Shown here: positions 6,479 to 64,000 of the stretch, piece by piece
Numbering within the stretch: the stretch's first letter is position 1
Layout: each line of letters starts with the position of its first letter
IMG/VR virus record: IMGVR_UViG_3300046660_000488
Location: 186,001-250,000 of that record
DNA: 64,000 bases
Strand: one strand, 5' to 3'
Notes under the pieces: generated by a model
What the model was told of the DNA's origin: nothing
The model's database searches: none
The model's input: only the letters and a program-made list of their open reading frames with translations
Program-made: the position numbers and the translations under genes

Positions 6479-7032
6479 GCGGGATCAACCAAACCGGCTT
6501 CACGGCCGAGATCAGCCGTGTGGCGCTCATCGAACGTCTGGAGATCGCCGCCAAGGCGTATCGGACGAAGCACGACGAATTCAAGGCTGCGTGGGTCGCG
6601 AGAAATGAAGAATCGCTCGCCAAGCAAAAAGTCAATGCAGAGCGCACCCGCCCCATCCACGATGCGGCGAAAGCAGCCTTCATCGCCGAGCGTCTGAAAG
6701 ACGACGTGATGATTCCGGGTTGCCATTCGTGGATGAGGCCGACGCCTCGCAAGAAAACGTTGAAGGAAGCCACGGACGGTTGGTATCAGGAATGGCGTCG
6801 TCTCTGCGAAGAAGACAGCACCCTCTGTTACAGCTTCGAACAAATGCCATACTTTCCTGATGGCGAAGCAATGTGGAAGTCGATCTTCGAGGATGGTCGA
6901 GGCCATCGGCATCACAACTTGCAGTGTGCTGATCGCTGTGACGCTCTTCTGAAACTCGCCGTGGACGAAGACTTGATCAACATCCGCCTCGACGAGCACG
7001 ACATCAAATTGATCAACATGGCTTGGGATTGA
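6475..7032 (+). CDS. Hypothetical protein, paralog family A copy 2
   Basis: ATGA overlap with previous gene; C-terminus 'LLKLAVDEDLINIRLDEHDIKLI'. Confidence 0.7.
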   Translation: MSGINQTGFTAEISRVALIERLEIAAKAYRTKHDEFKAAWVARNEESLAKQKVNAERTRPIHDAAKAAFIAERLKDDVMIPGCHSWMRPTPRKKTLKEATDGWYQEWRRLCEEDSTLCYSFEQMPYFPDGEAMWKSIFEDGRGHRHHNLQCADRCDALLKLAVDEDLINIRLDEHDIKLINMAWD

Positions 7033-7038
7033 AGACCA

Positions 7039-7413
7039 ATGGCCCACAATGACAAGCCTCCGGTCACCGCCGAGATCGACCGGTGCACCCTGCTCGACCG
7101 GTCCACGGCCGTCGCCGCGCACTATCAGGCCATCGTCGATGACGAGCAAGCCGCGAGGAAAGAGCGTGAGGCCATCGAGCGGGAAGAGGGCATCCAGCGC
7201 CGGATGACGTTCTGTTTCTTCTTCAAGCGCTCGCGAGAGAAAGCCGAGGCCATTTACCTGCGGGAGGAAGGGCGCTGGTTGGGCCACAATTGGCCGACCT
7301 CAGCGCAGTACCGCCTGAGCCGCGCTGAATCGCTCATTCGGATGGCGAGCGATGAAACGCTGACCTCCATCCGCATCCCCGAAAACGACATCTACCTGTT
7401 GAACGTCGAGTAG
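7039..7413 (+). CDS. Hypothetical protein, paralog family A copy 3
   Basis: C-terminus 'LIRMASDETLTSIRIPENDIYLL'. Confidence 0.7.
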   Translation: MAHNDKPPVTAEIDRCTLLDRSTAVAAHYQAIVDDEQAARKEREAIEREEGIQRRMTFCFFFKRSREKAEAIYLREEGRWLGHNWPTSAQYRLSRAESLIRMASDETLTSIRIPENDIYLLNVE

Positions 7414-7417
7414 CACC

Positions 7418-8725
7418 ATGAGTGACGAAATCCCCGCAGGCGACCACCGCCGCATCGGTCGCGAACTCGACCTGTTCCACCTGCAAGAAGAGGCCTCGGG
7501 GTCGGTCTTCTGGCACGAGCGCGGCCACACGCTGTTCCGCACGGTCGAAAACTACATCCGCACCCGGCTGGCCAATGCGGGCTACGGCGAGGTCAAGACG
7601 CCCCAACTCTACAGCCAGTCGCTGTTCAAGGCGTCGGGTCACATGGACATGTACGGAGACGCGATCTTCCAGACCGGCGGGGCCTTCATTCCGGAAGAGA
7701 TTCGCTACAATCCCATGGGTCCGGATGATCCGGGCATAACCACGGTGAAGGGCGATCCTCTCGTCCATCCGACTCACGCGCTGAAGCCGATGAACTGCCC
7801 CGGCCACGTTCAGATTTTCAAGGCCGATACCGTCAGCTATCGCCAGCTTCCGTGGCGTATGGCCGAGTTTGGCTGCTGTCACCGCAACGAGCCGTCCGGT
7901 TCGATCCACGGCATCATGCGCGTCCGCCAGTTCACGCAGGATGACGCCCACATCTTCTGCACCGAAGAGCAGGTGGCCGAAGAGACGAAGGCGTTCTGCG
8001 AATTGCTGCTGAGCGTCTATCGCGACTTCGGCTTCACCGACATCGAGATCGGTTTCTCGACCCGGCCGGACGTGCGCGCCGGGACGGACGAGGTCTGGGA
8101 CAAGGCTGAAGAAGCGCTGGCAACCGCCGTCAAGGCGGCGGGCCTGATCTACAAGCTCCAGCCCGGTGAGGGCGCGTTCTACGGCCCCAAGCTGGAATTT
8201 GCGCTGCTGGACAACCGTGGCCGTCGCTGGCAGTGCGGGACGATCCAACTGGATTTCGTCCTTCCCAAGCGTCTGGGCGCCGAGTATGTCGGCCCCGACA
8301 ACGTCGAGCGCCAGCCGGTCATGCTGCATCGGGCAATCCTCGGGTCGCTGGAACGCTTCATCGGCATCCTGCTCGAAAACTACGAGGGCAAGCTTCCCGC
8401 GTGGCTGGCCCCGCAGCAGGTCGTCGTCGTCTCCATCAAGCCGGAGACGAACGATTACGCCAAGGAAGTGTTCGAAACGCTTAAGGGCATGTGGGTCCGC
8501 CCGATCCTTGACATCCGCGACGAGAACGTATCGCAGAAGATCAAGGAGCACAGCGAAATGGCGATCCCCTACATCGTGGCGGTCGGCCCGCGTGACGAGG
8601 ACAACCGCACCATCGCGATCCGCAAGCTGGGCGACAAGAAACCCACGGACTACGAGCTTTTCGAAGGCTGCGGCATGATCGAGGAAGATTGCTTCCCGAT
8701 GGAGCTTCGGAAACACAACTGGTAA
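7418..8725 (+). CDS. thrS: Threonyl-tRNA synthetase, catalytic plus anticodon-binding domains only (no TGS/editing domain)
   Basis: 'DHRRIGRELDLF', 'ALKPMNCPGH', 'AEFGCCHRNEPSG..HGIMRVRQFTQDDAHIF', 'GEGAFYGPK', 'WQCGTIQLDF', 'MLHRAILGSLERFIGILLE', 'LPAWLAPQQV'. Confidence 0.95.
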   Translation: MSDEIPAGDHRRIGRELDLFHLQEEASGSVFWHERGHTLFRTVENYIRTRLANAGYGEVKTPQLYSQSLFKASGHMDMYGDAIFQTGGAFIPEEIRYNPMGPDDPGITTVKGDPLVHPTHALKPMNCPGHVQIFKADTVSYRQLPWRMAEFGCCHRNEPSGSIHGIMRVRQFTQDDAHIFCTEEQVAEETKAFCELLLSVYRDFGFTDIEIGFSTRPDVRAGTDEVWDKAEEALATAVKAAGLIYKLQPGEGAFYGPKLEFALLDNRGRRWQCGTIQLDFVLPKRLGAEYVGPDNVERQPVMLHRAILGSLERFIGILLENYEGKLPAWLAPQQVVVVSIKPETNDYAKEVFETLKGMWVRPILDIRDENVSQKIKEHSEMAIPYIVAVGPRDEDNRTIAIRKLGDKKPTDYELFEGCGMIEEDCFPMELRKHNW

Positions 8726-8767
8726 TTCTGGTTGACCAAAACACAGGTCATAGGGTAGAGGTAGCGT

Positions 8768-9028
8768 GTGCCTAAGATTCAGACTGACGACTGGGATTCG
8801 ATGGATGGCTACTACGACTGGAGCCAAGAACCACCGAAGCCCGTAAAGCCGGTTTTTTGGACCGACGACAAGGTCGAAATTCTGAGAAGGTGGTGGTTGT
8901 GGGGTGTCAGAACCGTCGTGATCGCCAGCGAATTGGGCACGACGAAAAACGCTGTGATCGGTAAGGGCACTCGAATTGGCCTGACCGGTCTCCACGGATC
9001 GGAACCCCGGCCCGCGCAAATCTATTGA
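8768..9028 (+). CDS. gcrA: GcrA-like cell-cycle regulator (HTH domain)
   Basis: 'WTDDKVEILRRWW..G.....IASELGTTKNAVIGKGTRIGL' matches the GcrA N-terminal HTH (WT.E.V..L..LW..G.S...IA..LG.VTRNAVIGK.HRLGL). GTG start with GAGG RBS. Confidence 0.75.
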   Translation: MPKIQTDDWDSMDGYYDWSQEPPKPVKPVFWTDDKVEILRRWWLWGVRTVVIASELGTTKNAVIGKGTRIGLTGLHGSEPRPAQIY

Positions 9029-9040
9029 AGGAAGTGGGCC

Positions 9041-9712
9041 ATGTCCCTATTCGACGACATCAAGGCCGCCCAACTCCGGGCGCGTAAGGACCGCAACACG
9101 GTCAAGGCCACGCTGCTGACCACGCTGATCACCGAAGCCTCGACGGGCCTCGCAGCGACGCTGCGGACGGAAGCCGAGAACGCGATCAACAAGCTCGCCA
9201 ACGGCGACAAGACCAAGCACGAATGGCCGCCCGGCCGTCTGGACGTCGCGCTGGCCGCCCTCAAGCAAGAGGCCAAGGCCGAAGGCTGGGACGAGGACGC
9301 CTACAAGGCCAAGGTCGCCGACCTCAACGCTCTGGCGGAGTCCGAAGGCTGGCCGCTGGGTCGCCGTGACGCCGAGATTGCCAAGGTCAACGCCCAGTTC
9401 AACAAGGACTGGCTCCCGTCCGACGAGCAAGTCGAGAAGGTCATCGGCAAGTTCGTCAAGGCCGGGCGCGACAACCTCGCGGTCTTCGAGCAGCGCGGCA
9501 ACGCCGAGAAGGTGGACGAGGTCAAGCAAGAGCTTGAAATCCTCACGGATTTCCTGCCCAAGCAACTGACCGAGGGCGAGTTGACGGAGGTCATCAACAA
9601 CTTCCGCGCCGAGCATCCGTCCGCCCAGATCGGCCAGATCATGGGCCACCTCAAAGCCAGCTTCCAAGGTCGCTACGACCCGAAGATGGCCAGCCGCCTC
9701 GCGAACGGGTGA
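9041..9712 (+). CDS. GatB/YqeY domain protein with internal insertion
   Basis: 'IKAAQLRARK', 'EQVEKVIGKFVK', 'ELEILTDFLPKQLTEGEL', 'IGQIMGHLK..FQGRYD.KMAS' typical of YqeY; about 80 extra residues in the middle. Confidence 0.85.
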   Translation: MSLFDDIKAAQLRARKDRNTVKATLLTTLITEASTGLAATLRTEAENAINKLANGDKTKHEWPPGRLDVALAALKQEAKAEGWDEDAYKAKVADLNALAESEGWPLGRRDAEIAKVNAQFNKDWLPSDEQVEKVIGKFVKAGRDNLAVFEQRGNAEKVDEVKQELEILTDFLPKQLTEGELTEVINNFRAEHPSAQIGQIMGHLKASFQGRYDPKMASRLANG

Positions 9713-9715
9713 TCC

Positions 9716-9946
9716 ATGGCTGACATTCAAAGCGTCGTCGAAGAGATTCAGGACACGGCTGACTTGGCCGAAGCCCTCGAATTGCTGGAGAAGCGCACCG
9801 GCGATCCGGCGGCGAGAGTCGTCGTCGCGATCCTCAAAGACCTGAGCGACCGCAGTGGTTTCTTCGAAGACCTCGACGGCGACATCGAGTCGGAGATCGT
9901 CGGCGAACTCTACCAGAAAGCCAACGCGGCTCTCGAAGACGGATGA
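9716..9946 (+). CDS. Small acidic hypothetical protein
   Basis: Tightly packed ORF in a same-strand run, ATGA overlap with next gene. Confidence 0.6.
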   Translation: MADIQSVVEEIQDTADLAEALELLEKRTGDPAARVVVAILKDLSDRSGFFEDLDGDIESEIVGELYQKANAALEDG

Positions 9947-10407
9947 CCTTCGTCGGCCCGAAATGGTCACGCAGCCGCAAGAAAGCCAAGGCGCGCGTCA
10001 ACTTCCAACGGAAGCGATGCGCGTGGGGCAAGTACGTGCGCGGCTGTCGTGGCCATCCGGGCATCGTGATCGAGACGTGGTTCTCCGACGCCGACATCCA
10101 CGGCAACAGCGTGGATATTCGGTCGTTGGTCGATGGAGAAGAGGAATCCTGTTCTCTTCTCCATTGCTCTCCCACGCCGATGACCAAGGAACGGGCTGAA
10201 GCCGAGGCCGCCTACTGGCGCCTGTATGGCAAGGAAGCCGCGTGGCTGAAATTCCAGCCCGACTGGCTCGCCTACCTCACCCAGCAATGGGAAGAGCAGC
10301 AAGGCGATCCAGACCGGGCCGAGTGGTATCGCAAGCCGATCCACGAATACCTTCACCTGACTGAAGAACAATACGACCTGTGGGTCGTTCGCGGGGAGCT
10401 TCCGTAA
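9943..10407 (+). CDS. Hypothetical protein (154 aa)
   Basis: Coupled to both neighbours (ATGA, TAATG). Confidence 0.65.
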   Translation: MTFVGPKWSRSRKKAKARVNFQRKRCAWGKYVRGCRGHPGIVIETWFSDADIHGNSVDIRSLVDGEEESCSLLHCSPTPMTKERAEAEAAYWRLYGKEAAWLKFQPDWLAYLTQQWEEQQGDPDRAEWYRKPIHEYLHLTEEQYDLWVVRGELP

Positions 10408-10928
10408 TGGGCAGTCGTGCCGGTTTTTGCTATGCCAACCCCGATGATTACACCGTCGATGTGACGACGCTGGAAACGGGCACGCCTCTCTACTTCATCA
10501 TGTACGAGGAAGCCAACAAGCGCAAGTGGAGCGATCTCGCCGACTACACGCTCGTGCGGCTTATCTTCAAGGAAGCAATTGTTCGCAGTCAAGAAGTCAA
10601 CATCTACGACGGTGTCAAGACTGAGCGTATCGAGTATCAGCTTCAATTCGAAGATGACGAGAACCATTACTTCACATGGGTTCTCGGCAACCATGACCGG
10701 CGAGGGTACGACTCGAAAGTCCGCATATACCGCACGCCGGAAGAGGCTCAGGCATGGATCAACCAATCCATGTATGAGCAGGTCAAAGAGGCTGAAGAGG
10801 CTTTGAAAGACCACAAGGCCCAAGTCGCGTGGCTCAAGAAACGCCAAGCCCTGCCGATGAAGGTTTACGCCCCCAACGGGGTGGACCAATACAAAGACCC
10901 CAAGTACGCCGCGCTGAAGGAAGGTTGA
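10407..10928 (+). CDS. Hypothetical protein, paralog family B copy 1
   Basis: TAATG coupling gives start 10407; beta-rich N-part plus C-terminal coiled coil, similar to the next ORF. Confidence 0.65.
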   Translation: MGSRAGFCYANPDDYTVDVTTLETGTPLYFIMYEEANKRKWSDLADYTLVRLIFKEAIVRSQEVNIYDGVKTERIEYQLQFEDDENHYFTWVLGNHDRRGYDSKVRIYRTPEEAQAWINQSMYEQVKEAEEALKDHKAQVAWLKKRQALPMKVYAPNGVDQYKDPKYAALKEG

Positions 10929-10932
10929 GCCG

Positions 10933-11451
10933 ATGGTGAAGAAGTATCTCCACTACACCGACCCGACACCTGAGCCGGAGTTTGATCCGACCAAGCACAA
11001 TCCGGACCTGCCGATCTACTTGATCTGCGTCGTGGACTCCAGCTTCCAAGACCTTGGGGAATACACCATCCTGCAAAACTGGCTGGTCGTCGAGGCCTTC
11101 ATCGAAGACGTGTTCCTTCGTGAGGACAGTGTCATCTATGACACGGACGGCTCGCGAGAATATCGGCGGCGGGAATGGGTGCTCAAATTCAAGGACGGAA
11201 GCTCGGCCTACTGGGTTGAGGGACGGCCCCGTGAACGAGCGATGGGCGATCCGCCCAAGGTCGGCGAAAGCGTCTGGATCAGCGACGACAAGGAATTGGC
11301 ATACAGCAGGGTGGCCGAGCGCGATCAGGCTGAGATCAGCATCGTCGAGTCGCAGGTCAAGGAATACCGGGCCAAGCTCAACTACCTGACGGCCAAGCGC
11401 GACCGTGGTCGCCACCTGTTCAATATTCACCTCGAACCAATTTCTGGTTGA
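10933..11451 (+). CDS. Hypothetical protein, paralog family B copy 2
   Basis: Same layout as the 10407 ORF. Confidence 0.65.
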   Translation: MVKKYLHYTDPTPEPEFDPTKHNPDLPIYLICVVDSSFQDLGEYTILQNWLVVEAFIEDVFLREDSVIYDTDGSREYRRREWVLKFKDGSSAYWVEGRPRERAMGDPPKVGESVWISDDKELAYSRVAERDQAEISIVESQVKEYRAKLNYLTAKRDRGRHLFNIHLEPISG

Positions 11452-11519
11452 CGAAAACAAAAATCAAGCGCACCCTAACTGGTAGACCAGTGTTAATCTG
11501 GCCCGTAGGAGGTAGCGTC

Positions 11520-11624
11520 ATGGGTTATTTCGTTGGACTGGTCGCGGCGTTGTACGTCGTCACGATGATCGTCATTCAGCCCAAGGTTCTTGCGGCTCTT
11601 GGCCGCGCAATGTTCGGTCGCTGA
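11520..11624 (+). CDS. Possible 34-aa hydrophobic peptide
   Basis: Strong AGGAGG RBS 8 nt before ATG and a palindromic motif upstream; MGYFVGLVAALYVVTMIVIQPKV...; 3' end overlaps the convergent gene. Confidence 0.35.
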   Translation: MGYFVGLVAALYVVTMIVIQPKVLAALGRAMFGR

Positions 11625-12402
11625 TTTTCTTCTTCAGCAAGTCGTAGAACTTGTACAGGCGCTTATCGAAGCGTCTCTGGTTCTCTGGCGTCAGGTAATC
11701 CCTGAACCCACGATCAAAATCGAACAGGTGTGCGCGCTTGAAAGCGTCGAAACTGGCCAGCGCCTTGAAATTGGCGCTCGGCTTGAAGTAATGGCGCTCT
11801 GATCCGATGATGTAGCTGCTGATGACGTTGTGCATGCCCTGCTGGAAATAGGCATTGAATTCCAGAGGACTGTTGAAATAGGCCTCCGGGTCCTTGCTGC
11901 TGACGGCTTGGACTTTCTGATTGAATTTCCCGCGCGTCGGCGTCGTCTGCCGGGAACGATCCTGATAGTGCGTTAGCTCGTGGACCATGTGCCCGAACAA
12001 GTTGGTCCAGTTGAGGCTATAGCCCAATTCGGTCTTGTCGCCGATGTCGCTGTCCACGCTGATCACGATGTAATAGATGGGCTTGCGCTCGGCGACGTTG
12101 CGACCCTGAAGCATACTGGCCGGGTTCTCTTCGACGTTCAGGCCCGGCGTATAGGCGAAGCCGATGAACAGGTCGTCTGGACCACCAAACTGATCGGCGT
12201 TGACGATGTAGAGCTTGGTCCCGTCGCGGATCATGCGCGCCTGCATCAGGTTGCGGATCGGCGTGTCCGCGTTGTTCTTACCGATCCAACGACCGAATTT
12301 CTGGACGAGCTTGTAGGCCTCAGCCTCCGAGGCGAATTGCTTCTCAGAGGGGTGTTCCGGCTGGTTTTTGTCTAGCGTGTCAAACAGTTCGTTCAGGATC
12401 AT
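11572..12402 (-). CDS. Hypothetical protein with HExxH motif (possible zinc metallopeptidase)
   Basis: 'GHMVHELTHYQD' followed by 'YFNSPLEFNAY'; N-terminus 'MILNELFD'; TAAATA 60 nt upstream. Confidence 0.6.
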   Translation of the reverse strand: MILNELFDTLDKNQPEHPSEKQFASEAEAYKLVQKFGRWIGKNNADTPIRNLMQARMIRDGTKLYIVNADQFGGPDDLFIGFAYTPGLNVEENPASMLQGRNVAERKPIYYIVISVDSDIGDKTELGYSLNWTNLFGHMVHELTHYQDRSRQTTPTRGKFNQKVQAVSSKDPEAYFNSPLEFNAYFQQGMHNVISSYIIGSERHYFKPSANFKALASFDAFKRAHLFDFDRGFRDYLTPENQRRFDKRLYKFYDLLKKKISDRTLRGQEPQEPWAE

Positions 12403-12950
12403 TCAAAGCGCGCATCCGAGACGATGCCCTCCAAGGGTTTGGGCGCCTCTTCGGCGCTCCAGTATTTAACCTCGCCGTGGAGGTAGACGCGGTTCTCGTA
12501 GATCGTGGCGCGCTCGGCCGAACGAACGGCGCGGCCGTCGTCTTCACGAACGAACAGATGGCTGGTCTTGGGGTTGAACCGGACCACCGCCGTGGCGCCT
12601 TTGGTCCCGTGTCCCCAGCGTGAGAAATTGCCGACCACGGCCGCCATGGGACGCTTGTTGATCTCACCCTTGGCGATCTTCGCGCGAGCGGCTTGGTCGA
12701 TGTAGAACTCGACGTCGCTGAGCCCCACGACCTTCTCGTAGCCGATCACCCGGCCGCGTGGCGTAGGAGCCCCGTGGACCGTGTGGACCGGCCCTTGGAC
12801 GTTGGCGTTCAGGTTTAGACGGACCGCCACCCGGCGGCCGTCCACGGCGGCCAGTGCCGTCATGAAAAGCTTGTCGGCGATGTGCCGGGGCAAGTGCTCG
12901 CGAAATACCTCGCGGAAATCCTCGTAGGTCGAAAGCTCCGCCTTGGTCAC
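12399..12950 (-). CDS. Hypothetical phage protein (183 aa)
   Basis: GTG start coupled to upstream stop; 'RPMAAVVG...VRFNPKTSHLFV' looks like a common phage hypothetical family. Confidence 0.65.
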   Translation of the reverse strand: MTKAELSTYEDFREVFREHLPRHIADKLFMTALAAVDGRRVAVRLNLNANVQGPVHTVHGAPTPRGRVIGYEKVVGLSDVEFYIDQAARAKIAKGEINKRPMAAVVGNFSRWGHGTKGATAVVRFNPKTSHLFVREDDGRAVRSAERATIYENRVYLHGEVKYWSAEEAPKPLEGIVSDARFE

Positions 12951-13303
12951 AAACGCTCTCCGTCTTCAGCGGCGGCGATGATCTCGTTCATCCGGCTGCT
13001 GGCATTCACCCATCGTTTACCAGATTCATCAAGCGCGTACAACGACTTGCGGCCGGAATTATCACCGACGAGCAGGAACGGTTGGAAGGCGCGCGGGTGT
13101 TTCTTGAACACCTGCATCAGCATCAGGACACGGTCTTCAACGAGGTCGCGATCCTTGAATCGGGCGTTCAACTTGGCCACGTCAAGCAAGGCTCCGACTC
13201 CACCGTCGAGGGGAAACGCGACTGCATCGATCCCATGCAAAGCGGCGTAGACGCTCAGTCGCATCTGGCCGTGGCTCTTGTAGAATGTGGCGTCTTCTTG
13301 CAT
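12947..13303 (-). CDS. Hypothetical protein (118 aa)
   Basis: Preceded by TAAATA-GAGG-ATG; coupled to next gene. Confidence 0.65.
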   Translation of the reverse strand: MQEDATFYKSHGQMRLSVYAALHGIDAVAFPLDGGVGALLDVAKLNARFKDRDLVEDRVLMLMQVFKKHPRAFQPFLLVGDNSGRKSLYALDESGKRWVNASSRMNEIIAAAEDGERL

Positions 13304-54852: not shown

Positions 54853-56562
54853 TCAGGGGTACTGTGCTTCCAATTCCGCGATACGGTCGTCGCTGATCTT
54901 GTCGAACAGGATGCCCGGCGGGTTGACGACCCACGGCCCTCCGACCGGCGTGTCGAAGGCGTTCTTGATTTTCTCGCTGGTGAACGGGATGAACGGCTCG
55001 AAGAACCTACCCAGTTCACAGGCGAAATAGATGCACTGCCGCAGAACCTGCTTGGTCCCTTCGAGGTCACCGGCCGAGTGGAGTTTCCACGGTGCCGCGT
55101 TCTGGAGGAAGGTGTTGGCATACTGGGCCATGTCGCGCAGCAGCGTGGCCGCCTTGACGATCTCGAAATCGCTCATGGCCCTTTGCTGTTGGGCGACGAT
55201 CTCCCCGAACGGTCCGATGTACGGACCCTCCATCAACGGCCTGTCGCTCTCGATGACCATGAGGTCGTATTTCTGGCACATCGAGACGACGCGGTTGATG
55301 AAGTTGCCCAGCTTGTCGGCCAGATCGCTGTTGACCGCTTTCTGGAAGCCGCTCCATGTGAAGGCCGTGTCGTTACTCTCCGGCGCGTTCGACAGCAGAT
55401 ACCAGCGCCAGTAATCGGCGGGGAACAATTCGAGCGCGGCGTCCATGAAGATGCCGCGATTGCCGGACGTTGAGAATTTCCCGCCGTTCCAGTTGAGCCA
55501 GTTGAAGGCCTTCAGGTAATCGACTGTCTTCATGTTCGACAGGTCGTCAAACGGCAGATCGTTTTTCGCGCCCAGCACGGTGGCCGGGAACGAGGTCGTG
55601 TGGAAGGCGACGTTGTCCTTGCCCATGACCTGCACGTAGGTCAGGTCGGATGTGTCGGCAGAAAGCCACGCTCGAACGTGCTGGGATTTGATGTACGACG
55701 TCCTCGCCGATTGCCCGAACTGTGCTTCAAAGACTTCTGATTCCGTGTGGCATGATTCGATGGTCGCCGCATAGTAGGCGATTGGGGCGTCGAACCAGAC
55801 GTAGAAGACCTTGCCGGGCATATCCGGAACAGGGATGCCCCATTTCAGGTCGCGGGTGATGCAGCGATCCTGAAGACCCTCGTTGATGTGCTTGTGGGCG
55901 ATTCCGCGCGCCAGCGTGCTCCAGTGCGCGTCTCGTTCGAGAAGCCACTTGGTGACGTCCGGCGCTGCCTTGGACAGACACAGGAACAGGTGATCGGTCT
56001 CGCGCAGTTCGAGGTTGGTCGAGCAGGAGATCGCCGATTGCGGATTGATCAGGTCGGTTGGGTCAAGAAGCGAACCACATTGGTCGCACTGATCGCCCCT
56101 CGCCATGCCGAACGAACACTTCGGGCAGGTCCCGAGGATGTAGCGGTCCGGCAGAAAGAGGTCGTCGTCAATGCTGAAGTACTGCTTGATCGTGCGTTTC
56201 TCGATCATCCCATTGGCCGACAGCGCCTCGTAGAACCGGCGCGTCAGGCGGTGGTTGGTCTTGGAAGACGAGCGACCGAAATGGTCGAACGACAGGCCGA
56301 ACCGGTCGGCGAGGTCGGCTTGGATAGCGTGCTGCTCACCACAATAGGTCTCGACAGACTGGCCAGCCGCCTGAGCGGCAAGCTCGGCAGGCGTGCCGTG
56401 CTCGTCAGTCGCGCAGATGAACTTGACTTCGCTATCGCCCCGAGCCCGCAAATGGCGCGCAAAGGCGTCGGCGGGAAGCATCGAGCCCGCGAGGTTTCCC
56501 AGATGCTTGACGCCGTTGATGTACGGCAAAGCCGAGGTGATTAGGAAGCGTTGGGTGCTCAT
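54853..56562 (-). CDS. metG: Methionyl-tRNA synthetase (short form, no C-terminal OB/Trbp domain)
   Basis: 'FLITSALPYINGVKHLGN', 'ATDEHGTP', zinc knuckle 'LPDRYILGTCPKC...GDQCDQCG', 'CITRDLKWGIPVP', 'YVWFDAPIAY', 'MGKDNVAFH', 'KFSTS', 'LADKLGNFINR'. Confidence 0.97.
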   Translation of the reverse strand: MSTQRFLITSALPYINGVKHLGNLAGSMLPADAFARHLRARGDSEVKFICATDEHGTPAELAAQAAGQSVETYCGEQHAIQADLADRFGLSFDHFGRSSSKTNHRLTRRFYEALSANGMIEKRTIKQYFSIDDDLFLPDRYILGTCPKCSFGMARGDQCDQCGSLLDPTDLINPQSAISCSTNLELRETDHLFLCLSKAAPDVTKWLLERDAHWSTLARGIAHKHINEGLQDRCITRDLKWGIPVPDMPGKVFYVWFDAPIAYYAATIESCHTESEVFEAQFGQSARTSYIKSQHVRAWLSADTSDLTYVQVMGKDNVAFHTTSFPATVLGAKNDLPFDDLSNMKTVDYLKAFNWLNWNGGKFSTSGNRGIFMDAALELFPADYWRWYLLSNAPESNDTAFTWSGFQKAVNSDLADKLGNFINRVVSMCQKYDLMVIESDRPLMEGPYIGPFGEIVAQQQRAMSDFEIVKAATLLRDMAQYANTFLQNAAPWKLHSAGDLEGTKQVLRQCIYFACELGRFFEPFIPFTSEKIKNAFDTPVGGPWVVNPPGILFDKISDDRIAELEAQYP

Positions 56563-58968: not shown

Positions 58969-59249
58969 GGTAGGTTTCCCGATCTGGCGATTTCCGCCGC
59001 TTGCAATTGAAGCTCCGCCATACGGACGGCTTCATCCATATGGAAATTCGCATCCGGAACGCCAGCCGCCCGAACCTCAAAAGCGGCTTTTCTGATAGAA
59101 ATAACCGCGCGCTTGATGTGGGCGAATTGGATGTCGTTCAGGTTCATTTCGCGATAGGACGCGACCAACGTTTCGAGGGTCGGTCCCTCCGGCGCCGGAT
59201 CAGTCACCCCGCCAGTGATTAACGATAGGGTAACGCCGGTCTTTTCCAT
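58965..59249 (-). CDS. Small hypothetical protein overlapping the nadE 3' end
   Basis: Starts 50 nt inside nadE; ATGA coupling to next gene supports it. Confidence 0.5.
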   Translation of the reverse strand: MEKTGVTLSLITGGVTDPAPEGPTLETLVASYREMNLNDIQFAHIKRAVISIRKAAFEVRAAGVPDANFHMDEAVRMAELQLQAAEIARSGNLP

Positions 59250-60936
59250 GAATCTTGCTCGTGATCTTGACGCCCGGCGCGGCCTGACGCCGCTTGTACT
59301 CCGCCATGTCCACCAGTTTACGGATTTTCTTCACGAGGTCCAGACGAAGCGCAAGTTCAGTGACGATTTCGTCGTCGCCCAATTCTTCCTCGATCATGGC
59401 CTTCAGGATGCTGTCCAGCACCGGGTACTCCGGCAGGCTGTCGCTGTCCTTTTGGTCCGCGCGAAGCTCGGCGCTCGGCGGCTTGACGATGATCTCTTCG
59501 GGGACGACGTCGATCCCGCTCTTGCCGAGGAAGCCGAAGCTGTCCAGATCGGCGGGCGCGATGGCGTTCCGCCAGCGGCAAAGCTCCCAGACGGTGGTCT
59601 TGTAGCAGTCCTTGATCGGGTTGAAGCCGCCCGACATGTCGCCGTACAGGGTGGCATAGCCGACGCTGACTTCCGACTTGTTGCCGGTGGTCAGCAGCAG
59701 GTGGCCCAACTGGTTGGACAGCGCCATCAGGATGTTGCCGCGCGCCCGTGCTTGGATGTTCTCGTCGGCGACGCCGGACAGGGCGATGATGCGCGGCTTG
59801 AACACGTCGGTCGTGCCGTCCTTCAGACGCAGCGCGCCATGGGTCGCCTGCCGCAATTGTTCCACCACCGGCTCGATGGGGATCAGCAGCAGTTCAGCGC
59901 CCAGACGCTTGGCGCCTTCGAACGCATCCGACTTGGAGTGGTCAGACGAGAAATTGGACGGCAGGCTGACCAACAGGACGTTCTCAGCCCCGATGGCGTC
60001 GCAGGCGATGGCCGCGACCAGACCCGAGTCCACGCCGCCTGAGTACCCGAGGACGACTTTCTTGAAGCCTTGCTTCCGCAGATAGTCGCGCAGGCCCAGA
60101 ACCAGAGCCTGATAGATGGCGCCGATGCTGGTGGGGACGACCTTGGCGTAGCCGTCGAGGCCGATCCGCTTGGTGTTGGGAGCAAGCTCCAGATCGAAAT
60201 AGGTCGTGCCCGCGACGAAGTGCGGAGCTTCCTGCACCTTCTGGCCATCGTAGAGGAACGAGCCGCCGTCGAAGACCAGTTCGTCTTGGCCGCCGACGAG
60301 GTTCACGTACAGGAACGGCAGGCCGACTTCCTTGACCCGGTTGGCGATCACCCGGCGGCGGACAGCGTTCTTGCCAGCCTCGAACGGTGAGCCGTTGATG
60401 GCGATCAGGAAGGTCGCCCCGGTGTCGGCCAATTGCTTGGTCACCTTCGGGAACCAAGCGTCCTCGCAGACCATCAGGCCGATCCGGTAGCCGCGCCATG
60501 TGAAGGCGGCGTTCTCGTAGGACGACGGCTTGAAAATGCGCTTCTCGTCGAAGACGCCATAGTTGGGTAGTTCGGTCTTCATGACCGTGGTGCGCTTGTA
60601 GACCCGCTCGGTGGGGTCGATCATGTAGGCGTTGTTGGTGACGCCGCCGTCCATGGTCAGGCCCTTGGCGGGCGCGCCGAAGATCAGCGCCGCCGTCTTA
60701 CCCGAGGCTTCCACGGCTTGTTGGATCAGCGACACGCGCTGGGCGACCGCGTCCATGAAGCTGTGACGCAGGACGAGGTCTTCCAGCGGATAGCCGGTCA
60801 GCGACATTTCCGGCGTGATGACGAGGTCGGCGCCCTTGTCGGCCGCTTCATGGTAGGCGTCGAGGATGGCTTTCATGTTGGCGTCCAGCGCGCCAACGGT
60901 GGGGTTCGATTGAACGACGGCGATCTTGATTTTCAT
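59200..60936 (-). CDS. nadE: Glutamine-dependent NAD+ synthetase
   Basis: N-terminal nitrilase domain ('TPEMSLTGYP', 'KTELPNYGVFDEKRIF', 'MVCEDAW') fused to NAD synthase ('VVLGYSGGVDS', 'ENIQARARG', 'TTGNKSE..VGYATLYGD', 'KPPSAELR', 'EYKRRQA'). Confidence 0.96.
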   Translation of the reverse strand: MKIKIAVVQSNPTVGALDANMKAILDAYHEAADKGADLVITPEMSLTGYPLEDLVLRHSFMDAVAQRVSLIQQAVEASGKTAALIFGAPAKGLTMDGGVTNNAYMIDPTERVYKRTTVMKTELPNYGVFDEKRIFKPSSYENAAFTWRGYRIGLMVCEDAWFPKVTKQLADTGATFLIAINGSPFEAGKNAVRRRVIANRVKEVGLPFLYVNLVGGQDELVFDGGSFLYDGQKVQEAPHFVAGTTYFDLELAPNTKRIGLDGYAKVVPTSIGAIYQALVLGLRDYLRKQGFKKVVLGYSGGVDSGLVAAIACDAIGAENVLLVSLPSNFSSDHSKSDAFEGAKRLGAELLLIPIEPVVEQLRQATHGALRLKDGTTDVFKPRIIALSGVADENIQARARGNILMALSNQLGHLLLTTGNKSEVSVGYATLYGDMSGGFNPIKDCYKTTVWELCRWRNAIAPADLDSFGFLGKSGIDVVPEEIIVKPPSAELRADQKDSDSLPEYPVLDSILKAMIEEELGDDEIVTELALRLDLVKKIRKLVDMAEYKRRQAAPGVKITSKIHGKDRRYPIVNHWRGD

Positions 60937-60940
60937 TGTC

Positions 60941-62026
60941 TCAGCCTTGGAATTCGATGATCGCGGCCCGGACGGTCGCGGGGTCGAGCTTGGTCGGGGA
61001 TGCGCGCATCACCTGACCCATCGCCCAACCGATGACTTTTTGGTCGCCTTCTGCGACCTTGGCGGCCTGTGCCGGATTGGCGTCGAGGACGGCCTTGATC
61101 ATGGCCTTGATCTCGTCGCCGCCCGCTTGGCTGAAGATCGGCTCCAGCACATCGCAGAGGATGGCGTAGAAGACGACCCGAGCCGCGTCGCGCGCCGAAT
61201 AGGTCTCGTCGATCTCGGCGCTCGGCCGCAGGACCAGCAGCACGTCATGCAGTTCGGCGTTGAACCGCGAGAGCAGCGCCGCGTAGAGGTCTTTGCGCGC
61301 CCCGTCAGGGATCAGCCCGGCGGCCAGCGCCGTGCCCAATTCCTTCAGGCCCGCTGCGTGGATGATCCGGTTGCGATCCTCGAACCCAAGCTCGCGTTCC
61401 TTCATCTTGGCGGCCATCGGGCCGAGGATGAAGTTGACGACCTCGTTGACCACGGCCGGGGTGTGCCCACGGCAGAGCCAGTCGAGATAGTAGAAGATGT
61501 CGAGCGTCCGTTCGCCCGACCACGACATCAGGTTGCGGATTTTTCCGTGCTCGACATCGAGCCCGATCATTCCGTTGATGATCTCGTAGGGGCTCTCGCC
61601 GAACCAGCGCGTGGCCCCCACGCCGTCGAGCAACGGAGCAGGCTTGGTCACGAACCGGCTGACGTCCCGATCCCGAGGCGTGACGAGGATGTCGCTGAAC
61701 GCGGCGGCGAAGTCTTCGGCGACCACGTGATGCTCGAAGTCGTAGAGCGACCAGCAGGTCGAGCCGTCGTTGATGACGTGGTAGGGCATGATCTTGGTCA
61801 CGCCATCCTCGTCGGTCACCGGGCGCTCGCCCCAGCGCTCACCCGCCACCCAGACGATCTCGCATCGGCTTTCGTTATCGACCAGCCACTTGATGATCGA
61901 CTGGCGCCGGTCTTCATCGACCGAATCGGTCTTCAGCCACACGGGATTGATGGACGCCCCCTTGCTGAAGGAGTCCTCCGTGGCGACGACCTTGCCATTT
62001 ACGAAGCGAGAGTCCGGGTGGAACAT
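60941..62026 (-). CDS. Unknown N-terminal domain fused to a GatB/YqeY C-terminal tail domain
   Basis: C-terminus 'IKAMIKAVLDANPAQAAKVAEGDQKVIGWAMGQVMRAS..KLDPATVR' matches the GatB tail; start at ATG 62026 just after the pncA stop. Confidence 0.7.
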   Translation of the reverse strand: MFHPDSRFVNGKVVATEDSFSKGASINPVWLKTDSVDEDRRQSIIKWLVDNESRCEIVWVAGERWGERPVTDEDGVTKIMPYHVINDGSTCWSLYDFEHHVVAEDFAAAFSDILVTPRDRDVSRFVTKPAPLLDGVGATRWFGESPYEIINGMIGLDVEHGKIRNLMSWSGERTLDIFYYLDWLCRGHTPAVVNEVVNFILGPMAAKMKERELGFEDRNRIIHAAGLKELGTALAAGLIPDGARKDLYAALLSRFNAELHDVLLVLRPSAEIDETYSARDAARVVFYAILCDVLEPIFSQAGGDEIKAMIKAVLDANPAQAAKVAEGDQKVIGWAMGQVMRASPTKLDPATVRAAIIEFQG

Positions 62027-62037
62027 CGGGTAAGCCC

Positions 62038-62691
62038 TTAGACGCCGAAGTCGGCGGTGGTCGCGAACTGGACGCCAGCGGCGATCAGTTGTTCGGTCAT
62101 GGCGTCGTTCGATCCGTCCGGAATGGCCTTGGTCAGGTCTTCCACGAGCACGGTGTCGAAGGTCGCCTCGGTGTTGACGCTCAGGTCGAGCAGGGTGAAG
62201 CCGACGCAGTAATTGCGAGCCAGACCCACGACGAACACGCGGCGGATGCCACGGCTGAACAGATAGCCGATCAGGCCGGTCGGGGTGATCTTGTCGTTCT
62301 CGTAGGCACCGGAGTAGCTGTCGATGGCCTTGTTCATGCCCTTGCGGACGATGGCCGCCGCCCGCTCGATGGTGTCCACCACGTTCGGGTGGAATTCCGC
62401 GCCGGGCGTGCCTTGGACGCAGTGGTCGGGCCACGCGACTTGGTCGCCGTAGGAGACCTGCACGATGGAGAACGGATCGACGCCATGGGTGCTGGCGAAC
62501 GAGCTATGACCGGCCGGATGCCAGTCCTGCGTGACGACGATCAGGCCGCCGTTCTTGGCGAAATGGAACGACAGGGCATTGATGCCTGTCATGATCTCGT
62601 CGCCTTCGGCCACGGCCAGCGCACCGCCGGGGCAAAAGTCGTTCTGGGGGTCGATGACGATGAGTGCGTCGGTCTTGGAAATCTGGAACAT
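62038..62691 (-). CDS. pncA: Nicotinamidase/pyrazinamidase
   Basis: 'ALIVIDPQNDFCPGGALAV', 'TQDWHP..HSSF', 'WPDHCVQGTPGAEFHP', 'RKG...DSYS', 'GLARNYCV'. Confidence 0.95.
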   Translation of the reverse strand: MFQISKTDALIVIDPQNDFCPGGALAVAEGDEIMTGINALSFHFAKNGGLIVVTQDWHPAGHSSFASTHGVDPFSIVQVSYGDQVAWPDHCVQGTPGAEFHPNVVDTIERAAAIVRKGMNKAIDSYSGAYENDKITPTGLIGYLFSRGIRRVFVVGLARNYCVGFTLLDLSVNTEATFDTVLVEDLTKAIPDGSNDAMTEQLIAAGVQFATTADFGV

Positions 62692-62747
62692 GGGTTTCTC
62701 CCGATTCGGGTTATAGGTTGTCGTTGAAACTGGTCAACGAAATTGGA

Positions 62748-64000
62748 TCAGACGATGATGGGCGCGCCGTTCAGGCCGTCGTTGCCGAAGACCCGGCGGT
62801 AGCGGGCGACTTCATCAGCGGGTCCAGTGGCCTTGTTGTAATTGTCCGACAGCTTGACGCAGGGACGACCATTGGCGCTGTAGGCCTTGCAGACGAGGCT
62901 CAGCGGCTTCATGAAGTCGTGACCCTTCGGCGAGCAGCCGTAGAAGTCGTTGGTTGCCAGCGTACCCCAGCCGAACGACTGGCGGATGACGCCCCGGAAG
63001 TGCTTGAAGATCGTCGGGATGTCTTCGCCGTGCGGCTTGTGGTGCGGCAGGTGGACGTCCAGACCATCGCTCGGGATCGCCAGCTTGGTGGCCGGGTCGC
63101 GGCCGTGGGCCTTGTAAAAATCGACGTATTCCTGAACGCCGTCGATGGCTTTCTTGGAATCCGGCCGACCACCGGCCCAGTCCGCCATCCACGTCGGCGC
63201 GTCCTTCAGGAATCCGGTCGTGCCGAAGGTGTCGGGAAGCATGATCCGCAGGGCTTGCGGATGATCTTCCTGCCATTCAGCGCACAGCTTGTACGGGGCG
63301 GCCTTCAGTTCCTCGTCGTCACTGGCCAACGCCGAGTAGACCATCGGAAGCTCGTGGGCGTTCGTGCCCCGAGCCTCGACGTTCAGTTCGGTGGCGAGGT
63401 GAACGTTCGACGTGCCGCCAAAGCGGTCGCCGAGGATTTCCTTCATCGTCTGGACGACGAACCGTTGCCACAGGTAGGAGTGACGACGGCGCGTGCCGAA
63501 GTCCGAGACACTGATGCCTTCAAGCTCAGGCGCCGCCAGAGCTTCGAGCTTGTCGTACAGCTTGACCTTCGCGCGGTCGTACAGACGAACCAGTTCGCTC
63601 TTGTCATGTTCCTTCAACAGCGACCGGGCATAAAGCTCCGAAATCACGGTCAGGCAGTGAAGCTCCCAGTCGGTGCTTTTGACCCAGCGGCCGGGGAACC
63701 GGATGTCGTAGTTGCCGGTGTTGTAGCCGACCGTGCCGTTGTAGGCGCGCTCGTGCTCGATGTGGTACTCGGGGAGCTTCGACGTCCGCAGGAAGTCGAT
63801 GTAATCCTTGCCGAAGATGCCGTCGAGGCCCGAGAAGCGCTGGCCTTGCAGGATGACCAGTTCGGTCGGCTGGTACATGACCGTCCGGGCGTGGTCGAAC
63901 TGTTCCTTGATCTCTTCGATGCTGACGAAGTTGGCCAGCGGAACGTCCGAGCGGTTCTTGAACCGGAATTCGACGTCCACGTTCGGGTTCCGCCGCAGGT
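62748..64000 (-). CDS. pncB: Nicotinate phosphoribosyltransferase, 5' end outside the window
   Basis: 'FRFKNRS', 'SDFGTRRRHS..WQ', 'GTSNVHLA', 'GTNAHE', 'LPDTFGT', 'RPDS', 'SDGLD', 'FGWGTLATND', 'VKLSDN..KATG'; frame is open to base 64000. Confidence 0.95.
   Translation of the reverse strand, partial: LRRNPNVDVEFRFKNRSDVPLANFVSIEEIKEQFDHARTVMYQPTELVILQGQRFSGLDGIFGKDYIDFLRTSKLPEYHIEHERAYNGTVGYNTGNYDIRFPGRWVKSTDWELHCLTVISELYARSLLKEHDKSELVRLYDRAKVKLYDKLEALAAPELEGISVSDFGTRRRHSYLWQRFVVQTMKEILGDRFGGTSNVHLATELNVEARGTNAHELPMVYSALASDDEELKAAPYKLCAEWQEDHPQALRIMLPDTFGTTGFLKDAPTWMADWAGGRPDSKKAIDGVQEYVDFYKAHGRDPATKLAIPSDGLDVHLPHHKPHGEDIPTIFKHFRGVIRQSFGWGTLATNDFYGCSPKGHDFMKPLSLVCKAYSANGRPCVKLSDNYNKATGPADEVARYRRVFGNDGLNGAPIIV

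What the first reader, a model, noticed from the sequence alone, without database searches (positions are those of the whole stretch)
59200..64000. Phage-encoded deamidated NAD+ salvage route (pncB-pncA-X-nadE): candidate counter to NAD-depleting defences
Seen: co-oriented pncB, pncA, an unknown gene and a glutamine-dependent nadE. Known: PncA turns nicotinamide into nicotinate, PncB makes NaMN, NadD/NadM makes NaAD and NadE amidates it to NAD+. Thoeris, Sir2 and TIR-type defences cleave NAD+ to ADP-ribose plus nicotinamide, and the described phage reconstitution pathways NARP1 (Adps+Namat) and NARP2 (Nampt+NMNAT) use the amidated route. Inference: this cluster rebuilds NAD+ from nicotinamide by a different, deamidating route, and could also recycle nicotinamide released by the phage's own ARTs. 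No adenylyltransferase is in the window, so it is host-supplied, upstream of base 64000, or replaced.
Basis: partly seen in the sequence, partly recalled or inferred. Interest (0 to 1): 0.75.

Follow-up and report, generated by a model that had tools for sequence, protein, structure and literature searches.

The report
Megaphage nicotinamide-to-NAD+ deamidating salvage cluster
A complete 578-kb soil megaphage carries a tight gene block that should rebuild NAD+ from nicotinamide via nicotinic acid; the genes look intact and the "missing" adenylyltransferase sits just past the window edge, but such clusters are already described in jumbo phages and an anti-defence role is untested.

Summary
On the minus strand lie glutamine-dependent nadE (59200-60936), gene X (60941-62026), pncA (62038-62691) and pncB (62748 to past the window end). 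All have full-length matches to solved enzymes and intact catalytic motifs.

It is a fused NadM-Nudix, the same family as the NARP2 Nmnat. A canonical PRPP synthetase lies 73 kb away.

The genome is a complete, terminally repeated, T4-like IMG/VR phage from a rhizosphere metagenome. It has no NAMPT/Namat, PnuC, NadR or NadD, so this is its only NAD+ route.

X is not an NAD enzyme. It is a GatB-tail/YqeY-type helical protein with an orphan N-terminal domain. It is absent from an otherwise syntenic cluster (L015), and its relatives sit beside RNA ligases.

The block is phage-specific: none of the 80 closest cellular pncB loci carries nadE or nadM nearby. Misassembly is unlikely.

Preiss-Handler clusters in jumbo phages are already published (PMC11662467). 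Cultured rhizobial jumbo phages carry related gene sets. The counter-defence role is plausible but untested, and general NAD+ supply is an equal rival.

Verdict: new member of a known kind, moderate interest.

The parts
59200..60936 (-). nadE, glutamine-dependent (two-domain) NAD+ synthetase, 578 aa
   Evidence: Pfam CN_hydrolase plus NAD_synthase. NCBIfam NF010588 at 632.7 bits, cut-off 479. Full-length matches to 3N05, 5KHA and 4F4H at E about 1e-120. Glutaminase triad context E43, K120, C157 and the P-loop SGGVDS at 299-304 are present. PHROG 36784 'NAD synthetase' at 616 bits.
60941..62026 (-). X, 361 aa: orphan N-terminal domain (about 1-143) plus a C-terminal GatB-tail/YqeY-type helical domain; probably RNA/tRNA-binding, not an NAD enzyme
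   Evidence: Pfam GatB_Yqey at residues 304-356 of X, numbered 440-492 in the 497-aa ORF. The AF2 model is confident only from about residue 145. Best Foldseek matches are GatB, 9a6e and 3ip4. Ten homologues exist in 5.8e9 proteins. The short ones lie directly after a T4 Rnl1-type RNA ligase. The N-terminal domain has one relative in 1.8e9 representatives. X is absent from the syntenic cluster in L015.
62038..62691 (-). pncA, nicotinamidase, 217 aa
   Evidence: Pfam Isochorismatase. NCBIfam NF008623 at 173.2 bits, cut-off 174. Match to A. baumannii nicotinamidase 2WT9 at E 3.6e-49. Catalytic D14, K117, C162 and the metal ligands D56, H58, H90 lie in conserved motifs.
62748..64000 (-). pncB, nicotinate phosphoribosyltransferase. 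The 452-aa gene runs to extended coordinate 64106; its first 35 codons lie outside the window.
   Evidence: Pfam NAPRTase_N plus NAPRTase on the full gene. Match to A. tumefaciens NAPRTase 1YBE at E 7e-124 over residues 3-444. NCBIfam NF003704 at 368 bits, cut-off 379. It is the only PF04095 gene in the genome, so there is no NAMPT or Namat.
64000..64000 (-). Pointer: the cluster continues beyond the window. nadM-Nudix (428 aa) lies at extended coordinates 64117-65403 (G000:C1:250117-251403). A Ros/MucR gene lies at 65557-66228.
   Evidence: Pfam CTP_transf_like plus NUDIX. Best NCBIfam hits are all bifunctional NMN adenylyltransferase/Nudix models, best 310 bits, below the cut-off of 397. Matches to Synechocystis 2QJO and Francisella 2QJT NadM-Nudix at E 8e-56 and 1e-52. 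The HIGH motif at 51-54, SATPMR at 189-194 and the Nudix box at 296-315 are intact.

Best explanation
The block is a phage-assembled, operon-like module: nadM-Nudix, pncB, pncA, X, nadE. It encodes every enzyme needed to turn nicotinamide (or nicotinate) into NAD+ by the deamidating Preiss-Handler route.

Inferred steps:
- PncA deamidates nicotinamide to nicotinate.
- PncB joins nicotinate to PRPP, giving NaMN.
- The NadM domain adenylates NaMN to NaAD.
- The two-domain NadE amidates NaAD to NAD+ with glutamine.
- The Nudix domain fused to NadM can split ADP-ribose into AMP and ribose-5-phosphate.
- The phage's own PRPP synthetase, 73 kb away, can turn that ribose-5-phosphate back into PRPP.

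In principle both products of NAD+ cleavage are recycled.

Shown here: gene identities, intact catalytic motifs, completeness of the set, phage origin, and conserved synteny.

Inferred: substrate preferences (NadM acting on NaMN, NadE acting on NaAD), co-transcription, and the biological purpose.

The purpose is to keep NAD+ up in the infected cell. I put about 0.35 on this being selected mainly as a counter to NAD+-depleting defences. I put about 0.45 on general NAD+ provisioning for a very large, slow phage with NAD+-consuming enzymes. The two are not exclusive.

X is most likely an RNA/tRNA-binding accessory that landed in the cluster, not a pathway step.
For: Identity and integrity of the enzymes.

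Only route in the genome:
- One PF04095 gene.
- No PnuC.
- The only PF01467 genes are NadM and a CoaD-like gene.
- Canonical Prs at 452 bits against a cut-off of 297.

Phage, complete:
- IMG/VR record with direct terminal repeats and CheckV 100%.
- T4-type gp23 at 304 bits.
- 69 tRNAs.

Conserved block:
- MucR-NadM-PncB-PncA-X-NadE-...-MetRS recurs in L004/L014 at 49-73% aa identity.
- The same block without X occurs in L015 at 46-58%.

Phage-specific assembly: of the 80 closest cellular pncB loci, 22 have pncA next door and none has nadE or nadM within 6 kb.

Recurrence in phages:
- About 15 further IMG/VR loci carry pncA with pncB, some also with nadE or prs, within 10 kb.
- Cultured phage Phosso has the same activities built from non-orthologous parts: NH3-type NadE, with separate Nudix and NMNAT.

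The NadM-Nudix family is common in phages: 465 records, including KVP40-like vibriophages.

Literature: NadM enzymes can use NaMN and work with a conventional NAD synthetase (PMC3376133).
Against: - No expression, timing or activity data exist. No RNA run holds the sequence.
- NadM-type enzymes often prefer NMN (PMC3376133), so the NaMN step is assumed.
- Three of the five NCBIfam best hits fall just under their curated cut-offs.

Against a defence-specific role:
- The genome also carries aaRS genes, Prs, a CoaD-like gene and 69 tRNAs. NAD+ genes fit a general pattern of metabolic autonomy.
- The route costs more ATP plus glutamine than NARP1 or NARP2.
- Removing nicotinamide would relieve product inhibition of sirtuin-type NADases (own knowledge).

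Promoter and terminator scans gave nothing above chance.
Confidence: 0.8

Rival explanations
1. General metabolic provisioning. The cluster simply boosts NAD+ supply (from host nicotinamide or from nicotinate in the rhizosphere) for a long infection cycle and for phage NAD+-consuming enzymes. It has no specific role against NADase defences.
For: - The genome carries many housekeeping genes: MetRS, TrpRS, Prs, a CoaD-like gene and 69 tRNAs.
- It carries NAD+ consumers and handlers: Tpt1 and an ADP-ribosylglycohydrolase.
- The published reading of jumbo-phage NAD clusters is provisioning (PMC11662467).
Against: - PncA starts from exactly the NADase product, and the fused Nudix takes the other product.
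- The same NadM-Nudix family is the Nmnat of NARP2, which was shown to defeat NAD+ depletion (bioRxiv 10.1101/2024.02.11.579819).
- Provisioning and counter-defence are not exclusive.
Confidence: 0.45
2. Francisella-type order of steps. NadE amidates NaMN to NMN (acting as an NMN synthetase), and NadM then adenylates NMN to NAD+.
For: NadM-Nudix enzymes favour NMN. In Francisella, NadM is paired with an NMN synthetase form of NadE (PMC3376133). The Francisella NadM-Nudix 2QJT is the second-best solved match.
Against: - The phage NadE is the two-domain glutamine type. It scores 632.7 bits on the conventional NAD+ synthase equivalog.
- It matches the Francisella enzyme 3FIU only at E 1e-10, against about 1e-120 for conventional enzymes.
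- Acinetobacter pairs a bifunctional NadM with a conventional synthetase.
Confidence: 0.1
3. X is an integral part of the pathway, for example an accessory or regulator of NadE or PncA.
For: X lies between pncA and nadE with gaps of 11 and 4 nt. It keeps that place in L004 at 49% identity. It is the only YqeY-domain gene in the genome.
Against: - L015 has the same cluster with pncA followed directly by nadE.
- C-domain relatives follow Rnl1 RNA ligases in other megaphages.
- The single N-domain relative lies near another RNA ligase.
- No NAD-related domain was detected.
- The NadE-X complex prediction gave no answer.
Confidence: 0.1
4. Host DNA misassembled into the phage contig.
For: The closest solved and cellular PncB sequences are alphaproteobacterial.
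Against: - Cellular identity is at most about 50-55%.
- The block is flanked by phage genes in a terminally repeated complete contig.
- Synteny is kept in two other viral contigs from other metagenomes.
- GC3 of 0.84-0.87 lies within the range of the phage's own gp23, Rnl1, Tpt1 and Prs genes.
- An independent 30.5-kb Logan contig spans X to gp30.3 with 0 differences at an even depth of 182.
Confidence: 0.02

Closest known systems
Preiss-Handler NAD+ gene clusters of 'NAD-jumbo phages' (PMC11662467, Microbiome 2024; e.g. Kuafu_71 pncB-nadD-nadE)
   Same: A jumbo phage carries a physically clustered, complete deamidated route with pncB and nadE, read as phage-autonomous NAD+ synthesis.
   Different: - The adenylyltransferase here is a NadM-Nudix fusion rather than NadD.
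- pncA is included, so the route starts from nicotinamide.
- NadE is the glutamine-dependent two-domain form.
- The phage is a T4-like rhizosphere megaphage with a probable alphaproteobacterial host, not a gut Bacteroidota phage.
- A YqeY-type gene is inserted in the block.
NARP2 (Nampt + Nmnat; KVP40 NadV/NatV) of Osterman et al. 2024
   Same: It starts from nicotinamide plus PRPP and ends in NAD+. The adenylyltransferase is the same NadM-Nudix family.
   Different: There is no Nampt in the genome. The single amidated step is replaced by PncA plus PncB before adenylation and NadE after it. This costs more ATP and needs glutamine.
Bacterial salvage I operons (for example Pseudomonas pncA-pncB-nadE, Clostridium nrtR-pncA-pncB-nadD-nadE; PMC2330246)
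   Same: The same enzymes and the same chemistry. Adjacent pncA-pncB pairs also occur in the closest alphaproteobacterial loci.
   Different: None of the 80 closest cellular loci has nadE or nadM beside pncB. No NrtR regulator is present; a Ros/MucR gene sits upstream instead.
Sinorhizobium phage Phosso (PV764938) and Agrobacterium phage Atu_ph07 (MF403008)
   Same: Both are cultured rhizobial jumbo phages with PncB at 45% identity. Phosso has a NadE-PncB-Nudix-NMNAT-isochorismatase cluster. Atu_ph07 has a glutamine-type NadE at 46.5% identity.
   Different: - Phosso uses an NH3-type single-domain NadE, with separate Nudix and NMNAT genes.
- In Atu_ph07 pncB and nadE lie about 89 kb apart, and no pncA was detected beside pncB.
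- The AU test rejects one clade for all five phage PncBs, p = 0.0009.

Membership tests
PncA nicotinamidase | Isochorismatase-fold protein with the Asp-Lys-Cys catalytic triad and Asp/His/His metal site | tested here: met
   D14, K117, C162 and D56, H58, H90 lie in the conserved motifs aligned to 2WT9.
PncA nicotinamidase | Score over the curated equivalog cut-off (NF008623, 174 bits) | tested here: inconclusive
   173.2 bits, 0.8 bit under the cut-off. The Pfam domain is over its own cut-off.
PncB nicotinate phosphoribosyltransferase | NAPRTase_N plus NAPRTase domains, full-length likeness to characterised PncB, and distinct from NAMPT | tested here: met
   Both Pfam domains are over their cut-offs on the full gene. 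Match to 1YBE at E 7e-124 over residues 3-444. Only 28 bits on the phage NAMPT family phrog_448. NF003704 at 368 bits is just under its cut-off of 379.
Glutamine-dependent NAD+ synthetase (NadE, two-domain) | N-terminal nitrilase-type glutaminase with a Glu-Lys-Cys triad, a C-terminal ATP-pyrophosphatase with SGGxDS, and a score over the equivalog cut-off | tested here: met
   NF010588 at 632.7 bits, cut-off 479. Motifs at E43, K120, C157 and 299-304.
NadM-Nudix bifunctional NMN/NaMN adenylyltransferase-ADP-ribose pyrophosphatase | HxGH and ISSTxxR-type motifs, an intact Nudix box, and the fused architecture | tested here: met
   HIGH at 51-54, SATPMR at 189-194, Nudix box at 296-315. Full-length alignment to 2QJO and 2QJT. 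The NCBIfam equivalogs score below their cut-offs, best 310 against 397.
NadM-Nudix bifunctional NMN/NaMN adenylyltransferase-ADP-ribose pyrophosphatase | Activity on NaMN, which the deamidated route needs | not testable with these tools
   The family includes both NMN-preferring and bifunctional members (PMC3376133).
NARP2 (Nampt + Nmnat) | A phage-encoded nicotinamide phosphoribosyltransferase | tested here: not met
   The only PF04095 gene in the complete genome is PncB.
NARP1 (Adps + Namat) | A Namat (NAMPT-family ADPR-PP transferase) next to a PRPS-like Adps | tested here: not met
   There is no second PF04095 gene. The one PRPS-family gene scores as canonical Prs (452 bits, cut-off 297) and lies beside TrpRS.
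NARP3 (PnuC + NadR) | A PnuC transporter and a NadR-like kinase/adenylyltransferase | tested here: not met
   No PF04973 match. The only PF01467 genes are NadM and a CoaD-like gene.
'NAD-jumbo phage', Preiss-Handler type (PMC11662467) | A phage genome over 200 kb that encodes pncB, a NaMN adenylyltransferase and nadE | tested here: met
   The genome is 578 kb and complete. pncB, nadM and nadE are adjacent. NadM stands in for NadD.
Anti-defence system against NAD+-depleting immunity | Restores NAD+ and phage growth in cells that express an NADase defence | not testable with these tools
   This needs experiments. No RNA or activity data were found.
GatB-tail/YqeY domain proteins (gene X) | C-terminal helical YqeY/GatB tail domain | tested here: met
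   Pfam PF02637 at 46.4 bits, cut-off 27. Foldseek best matches are GatB. Atlas neighbours are GatB-domain clusters, many of them viral.

The most novel reading that the evidence does not exclude
The block is a fourth, deamidating NAD+ reconstitution pathway. Expressed early in infection, PncA, PncB, NadM and NadE, together with the fused ADP-ribose pyrophosphatase and the phage Prs, rebuild NAD+ from both cleavage products. This lets rhizobial megaphages escape Thoeris, SIR2 and TIR-type NADase defences. Because it does not need intact ADP-ribose, it might also work against defences that evade NARP1.
Probability: 0.3. Interest if true: 0.7.

Novelty: new member of a known kind. Interest (0 to 1): 0.42.

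Why it matters
Three phage NAD+ reconstitution pathways have been shown experimentally (NARP1-3). None of them uses the deamidated route.

This locus, its two syntenic relatives, and the independently built cluster in the cultured Sinorhizobium phage Phosso give a concrete, testable candidate for such a route. The candidate has all of its parts identified, including the adenylyltransferase, an ADP-ribose hydrolase and a PRPP synthetase.

If it counters NADase immunity, it would extend the metabolic arms race to a new chemistry and to soil alphaproteobacterial phages. If it does not, it is one more example of metabolic autonomy in megaphages.

Tried and rejected
- **Promoter and terminator scan** of the block: counts no higher than in shuffles. 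There is no operon evidence beyond the short gaps.
- **NadE-X complex prediction**: 'no answer'. It counts neither for nor against binding.
- **N-terminal domain of X**: Pfam, NCBIfam and PHROGs gave nothing. Atlas gave only sub-threshold ferredoxin/ACT-like leads. AF2 pLDDT is under 50. An exhaustive HMMER search found one relative.
- **Gene after Rnl1 in this genome** as a possible second YqeY protein: unrelated.
- **First genome-contig scan with the single PncB**: no confirmed hit. The scan with an alignment worked.
- **DNA-level search in phages**: only short weak matches.
- **ART genes**: PF03496 and PF01129 are both negative. T4 Alt/Mod-type ARTs were not specifically searched.
- **NAD-dependent DNA ligase**: absent.
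- **Single acquisition of PncB by all five related phages**: rejected by the AU test, p = 0.0009. A clade of the three syntenic phages is not rejected, p = 0.29.
- **Recent foreign origin by composition**: rejected.

Full report
**What is there**

The window is bases 186001-250000 of a single 578,292-bp contig with 59% G+C and 69 tRNA genes. It is an IMG/VR virus record with direct terminal repeats, rated 100% complete by CheckV. It encodes a T4-type major capsid protein, gp23, at 304 bits. The source is a rhizosphere metagenome, and relatives about 90% identical appear at low depth in other soil runs.

At 59200-64000 all real genes lie on the minus strand. In order of transcription they are:
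- **pncB**, 452 aa, extended coordinates 62748-64106. The window end removes its first 35 codons.
- **pncA**, 62038-62691.
- **X**, 60941-62026. Its true start is the ATG at 62026. The mechanical 497-aa ORF overlaps pncA.
- **nadE**, 59200-60936.

These assignments rest. Gaps between genes are 56, 11 and 4 nt.

**The missing step**

I fetched the next 14 kb of the genome (L001). A 428-aa gene ends 10 nt upstream of pncB. It carries a cytidylyltransferase-like domain fused to a Nudix domain. Its best NCBIfam hits are all bifunctional NMN adenylyltransferase/Nudix models. Its best solved relatives are the Synechocystis and Francisella NadM-Nudix enzymes.

The whole genome holds only one other PF01467 gene, and it is CoaD-like.

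The genome has:
- one NAPRTase-family gene, so no NAMPT and no Namat;
- no PnuC;
- no NadR or NadD;
- a canonical ribose-phosphate diphosphokinase 73 kb away, beside a TrpRS gene.

**Integrity**

Each enzyme aligns over its full length to solved homologues and keeps the expected motifs:
- **PncA**: D14, K117, C162 and D56, H58, H90, aligned to 2WT9.
- **PncB**: E 7e-124 to the Agrobacterium tumefaciens enzyme 1YBE.
- **NadE**: glutaminase motifs at E43, K120, C157 and the SGGVDS loop. It scores 632.7 bits on the NAD+ synthase equivalog.
- **NadM-Nudix**: the HIGH motif, SATPMR and an intact Nudix box.

None of the five genes has an in-frame TAG. This matters because the phage carries two CUA-anticodon tRNAs.

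PncA, PncB and NadM fall slightly below the strict NCBIfam equivalog cut-offs. That is expected for diverged phage copies, but it is stated here as a limit.

**Gene X**

X has a confident helical C-terminal half and an unmodelled N-terminal 143 residues.

The C-terminal half:
- It is a GatB-tail/YqeY domain (Pfam; Foldseek to GatB; Atlas).
- Only ten homologues exist in 5.8 billion proteins.
- The full-length homologue sits in the same place in a syntenic viral contig, L004.
- The shorter homologues, which match only the C-terminal 220 residues, lie directly after a T4 Rnl1-type RNA ligase in other megaphage contigs.

The N-terminal domain:
- It has one relative among 1.8 billion representatives, a 106-aa protein that lies 1.1 kb from another RNA ligase.

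This genome has Rnl1 and Tpt1 elsewhere. It has no other YqeY gene. The gene after its Rnl1 is unrelated to X.

A third related contig, L015, has MucR-NadM-PncB-PncA-NadE with no X at all.

X is therefore best read as an RNA/tRNA-binding accessory lodged in the cluster, not a pathway enzyme. A NadE-X complex prediction returned no answer.

**Phage or host**

The closest cellular PncBs are 46-50% identical. They are mostly Alphaproteobacteria, with some Acidobacteriaceae. Of the 80 closest cellular loci, 22 have pncA next to pncB and none has nadE or nadM within 6 kb. The five-gene arrangement was therefore assembled in phages.

In the PncB tree:
- The window's protein pairs with L004 (100*).
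- It lies in a supported clade with L015, Atu_ph07, Phosso and a few cellular sequences.
- One clade of all five phage sequences is rejected, p = 0.0009.
- One clade of the three syntenic phages is not rejected, p = 0.29.

Composition matches bona fide phage genes: GC3 is 0.84-0.87, against 0.79-0.87 for gp23, Rnl1, Tpt1 and Prs. An independent 30.5-kb Logan contig spans X through gp30.3 with no differences at even depth.

Misassembly of host DNA is very unlikely. A probable alphaproteobacterial host is an inference from three things:
- the affinity of PncB;
- the Ros/MucR gene;
- the related Agrobacterium and Sinorhizobium phages.

**How it most likely works**

The route, each step inferred from family membership:
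1. Nicotinamide is deamidated to nicotinate by PncA.
2. Nicotinate plus PRPP gives NaMN, by PncB.
3. NaMN is adenylated to NaAD by NadM.
4. NaAD is amidated to NAD+ by NadE, with glutamine.

ADP-ribose can be split to AMP plus ribose-5-phosphate by the Nudix domain. The phage Prs can then turn the ribose-5-phosphate into PRPP.

The weakest step is NadM acting on NaMN. The family includes NMN-preferring members, but bifunctional NadM works with a conventional NAD synthetase in Acinetobacter and in archaea (PMC3376133).

The Francisella alternative runs NaMN to NMN by NadE, then NMN to NAD+ by NadM. It is less likely because this NadE is a conventional two-domain enzyme, far from the Francisella one.

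**Purpose**

For a counter-defence role:
- The two entry substrates are exactly the products of NADase effectors.
- NadM-Nudix is the Nmnat family of NARP2 and is common in phages, with 465 records.
- Phosso has built the same set of activities from non-orthologous parts, which points to selection for the function.
- An ADP-ribosylglycohydrolase and a SpoT-like hydrolase lie nearby.

Against, or neutral:
- The genome is generally rich in housekeeping genes.
- The route is costly.
- No expression data exist.
Tpt1 is a genuine nicotinamide-releasing NAD+ consumer.

I rate the biochemical reading at about 0.8. Within it, I rate a defence-driven role at about 0.35 and general provisioning at about 0.45.

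**Comparison with what is known**

It is not NARP1, NARP2 or NARP3, because a defining component of each is absent.

It does meet the published definition of a Preiss-Handler 'NAD-jumbo phage' (PMC11662467). It differs in using NadM-Nudix instead of NadD and in including pncA.

The surveys and papers checked give this picture:
- The Aravind-group surveys describe only the amidated NadV/NadM/NadR systems (PMC9503650, PMC7824862).
- The NARP preprint does not mention the deamidated route.
- The Atu_ph07 paper does not discuss pncB in its account of NAD+ metabolism. It uses the gene only as a phage-specific PCR marker (PMC6102473).
- Among 50,697 deposited phage records, 13 match PncB (12 over most of its length) and 10 match the two-domain NadE over its full length.
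- About 15 more IMG/VR loci pair pncA with pncB, some with nadE or prs as well.

**Verdict**

This is a new member of a known, bioinformatically described kind. The counter-defence hypothesis remains untested and can be tested directly.

Noticed in passing
G000:C1:109999-110155 (outside the window): Two adjacent tRNAs with anticodon CUA (ARAGORN labels them 'Pyl') among 69 tRNAs. They look like amber suppressors and hint at TAG read-through or recoding in part of the genome. The NAD genes have no in-frame TAG.
   Followed up: partly
window 54853-56562 (-) and G000:C1:~321439-322275: Phage-encoded methionyl-tRNA synthetase, 2.6 kb downstream of nadE and kept in that place in L004. A tryptophanyl-tRNA synthetase lies next to the phage Prs.
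   Followed up: partly
L001:7557-8228 (-) = G000:C1:251557-252228: A Ros/MucR-family zinc-finger regulator lies directly upstream of nadM-Nudix. It is conserved in that position in all three syntenic phage contigs (L001, L004, L015). It is a possible regulator of the block or of host genes.
   Followed up: partly
L001:13596-14561 (-) and L001:15726-16607 (+): An ADP-ribosylglycohydrolase (DraG/Tri1-like) and a SpoT-like HD-domain hydrolase lie 6-10 kb upstream of the cluster. Both are candidate reversers of host ADP-ribosylation and alarmone-based defences.
   Followed up: no
G000:C1:11436-11936 (+) and G000:C1:76168-77406 (-): Tpt1/KptA, an NAD+-dependent RNA 2'-phosphotransferase, and a T4 Rnl1-type RNA ligase. 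Together they form a tRNA-repair set that consumes NAD+ and releases nicotinamide. Relatives of X sit beside Rnl1 in other megaphages.
   Followed up: partly
G000:C1:371944-372654 (+): A CoaD-like (phosphopantetheine adenylyltransferase) gene, 105 bits against a cut-off of 103. It is another cofactor-synthesis gene in the phage.
   Followed up: no
L001:10197-12461 (+): A 754-aa protein with a weak prokaryotic RING finger match (Prok-RING_4). It is conserved next to the cluster region in L004 (741 aa). Its function is unknown.
   Followed up: no
G000:C1:434398-434676 (+): A second, short gp23-like frame with a TGA inside it. It may be a degraded or recoded capsid-protein paralogue.
   Followed up: no
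L003 (Sinorhizobium phage Phosso, PV764938) 6623-12264: A cultured jumbo phage with an analogous cluster built from different parts: single-domain NH3-type NadE, PncB, a separate Nudix, a separate NMNAT and an isochorismatase-family hydrolase. A nucleoside 2-deoxyribosyltransferase-like gene lies close downstream (12710-13162).
   Followed up: partly
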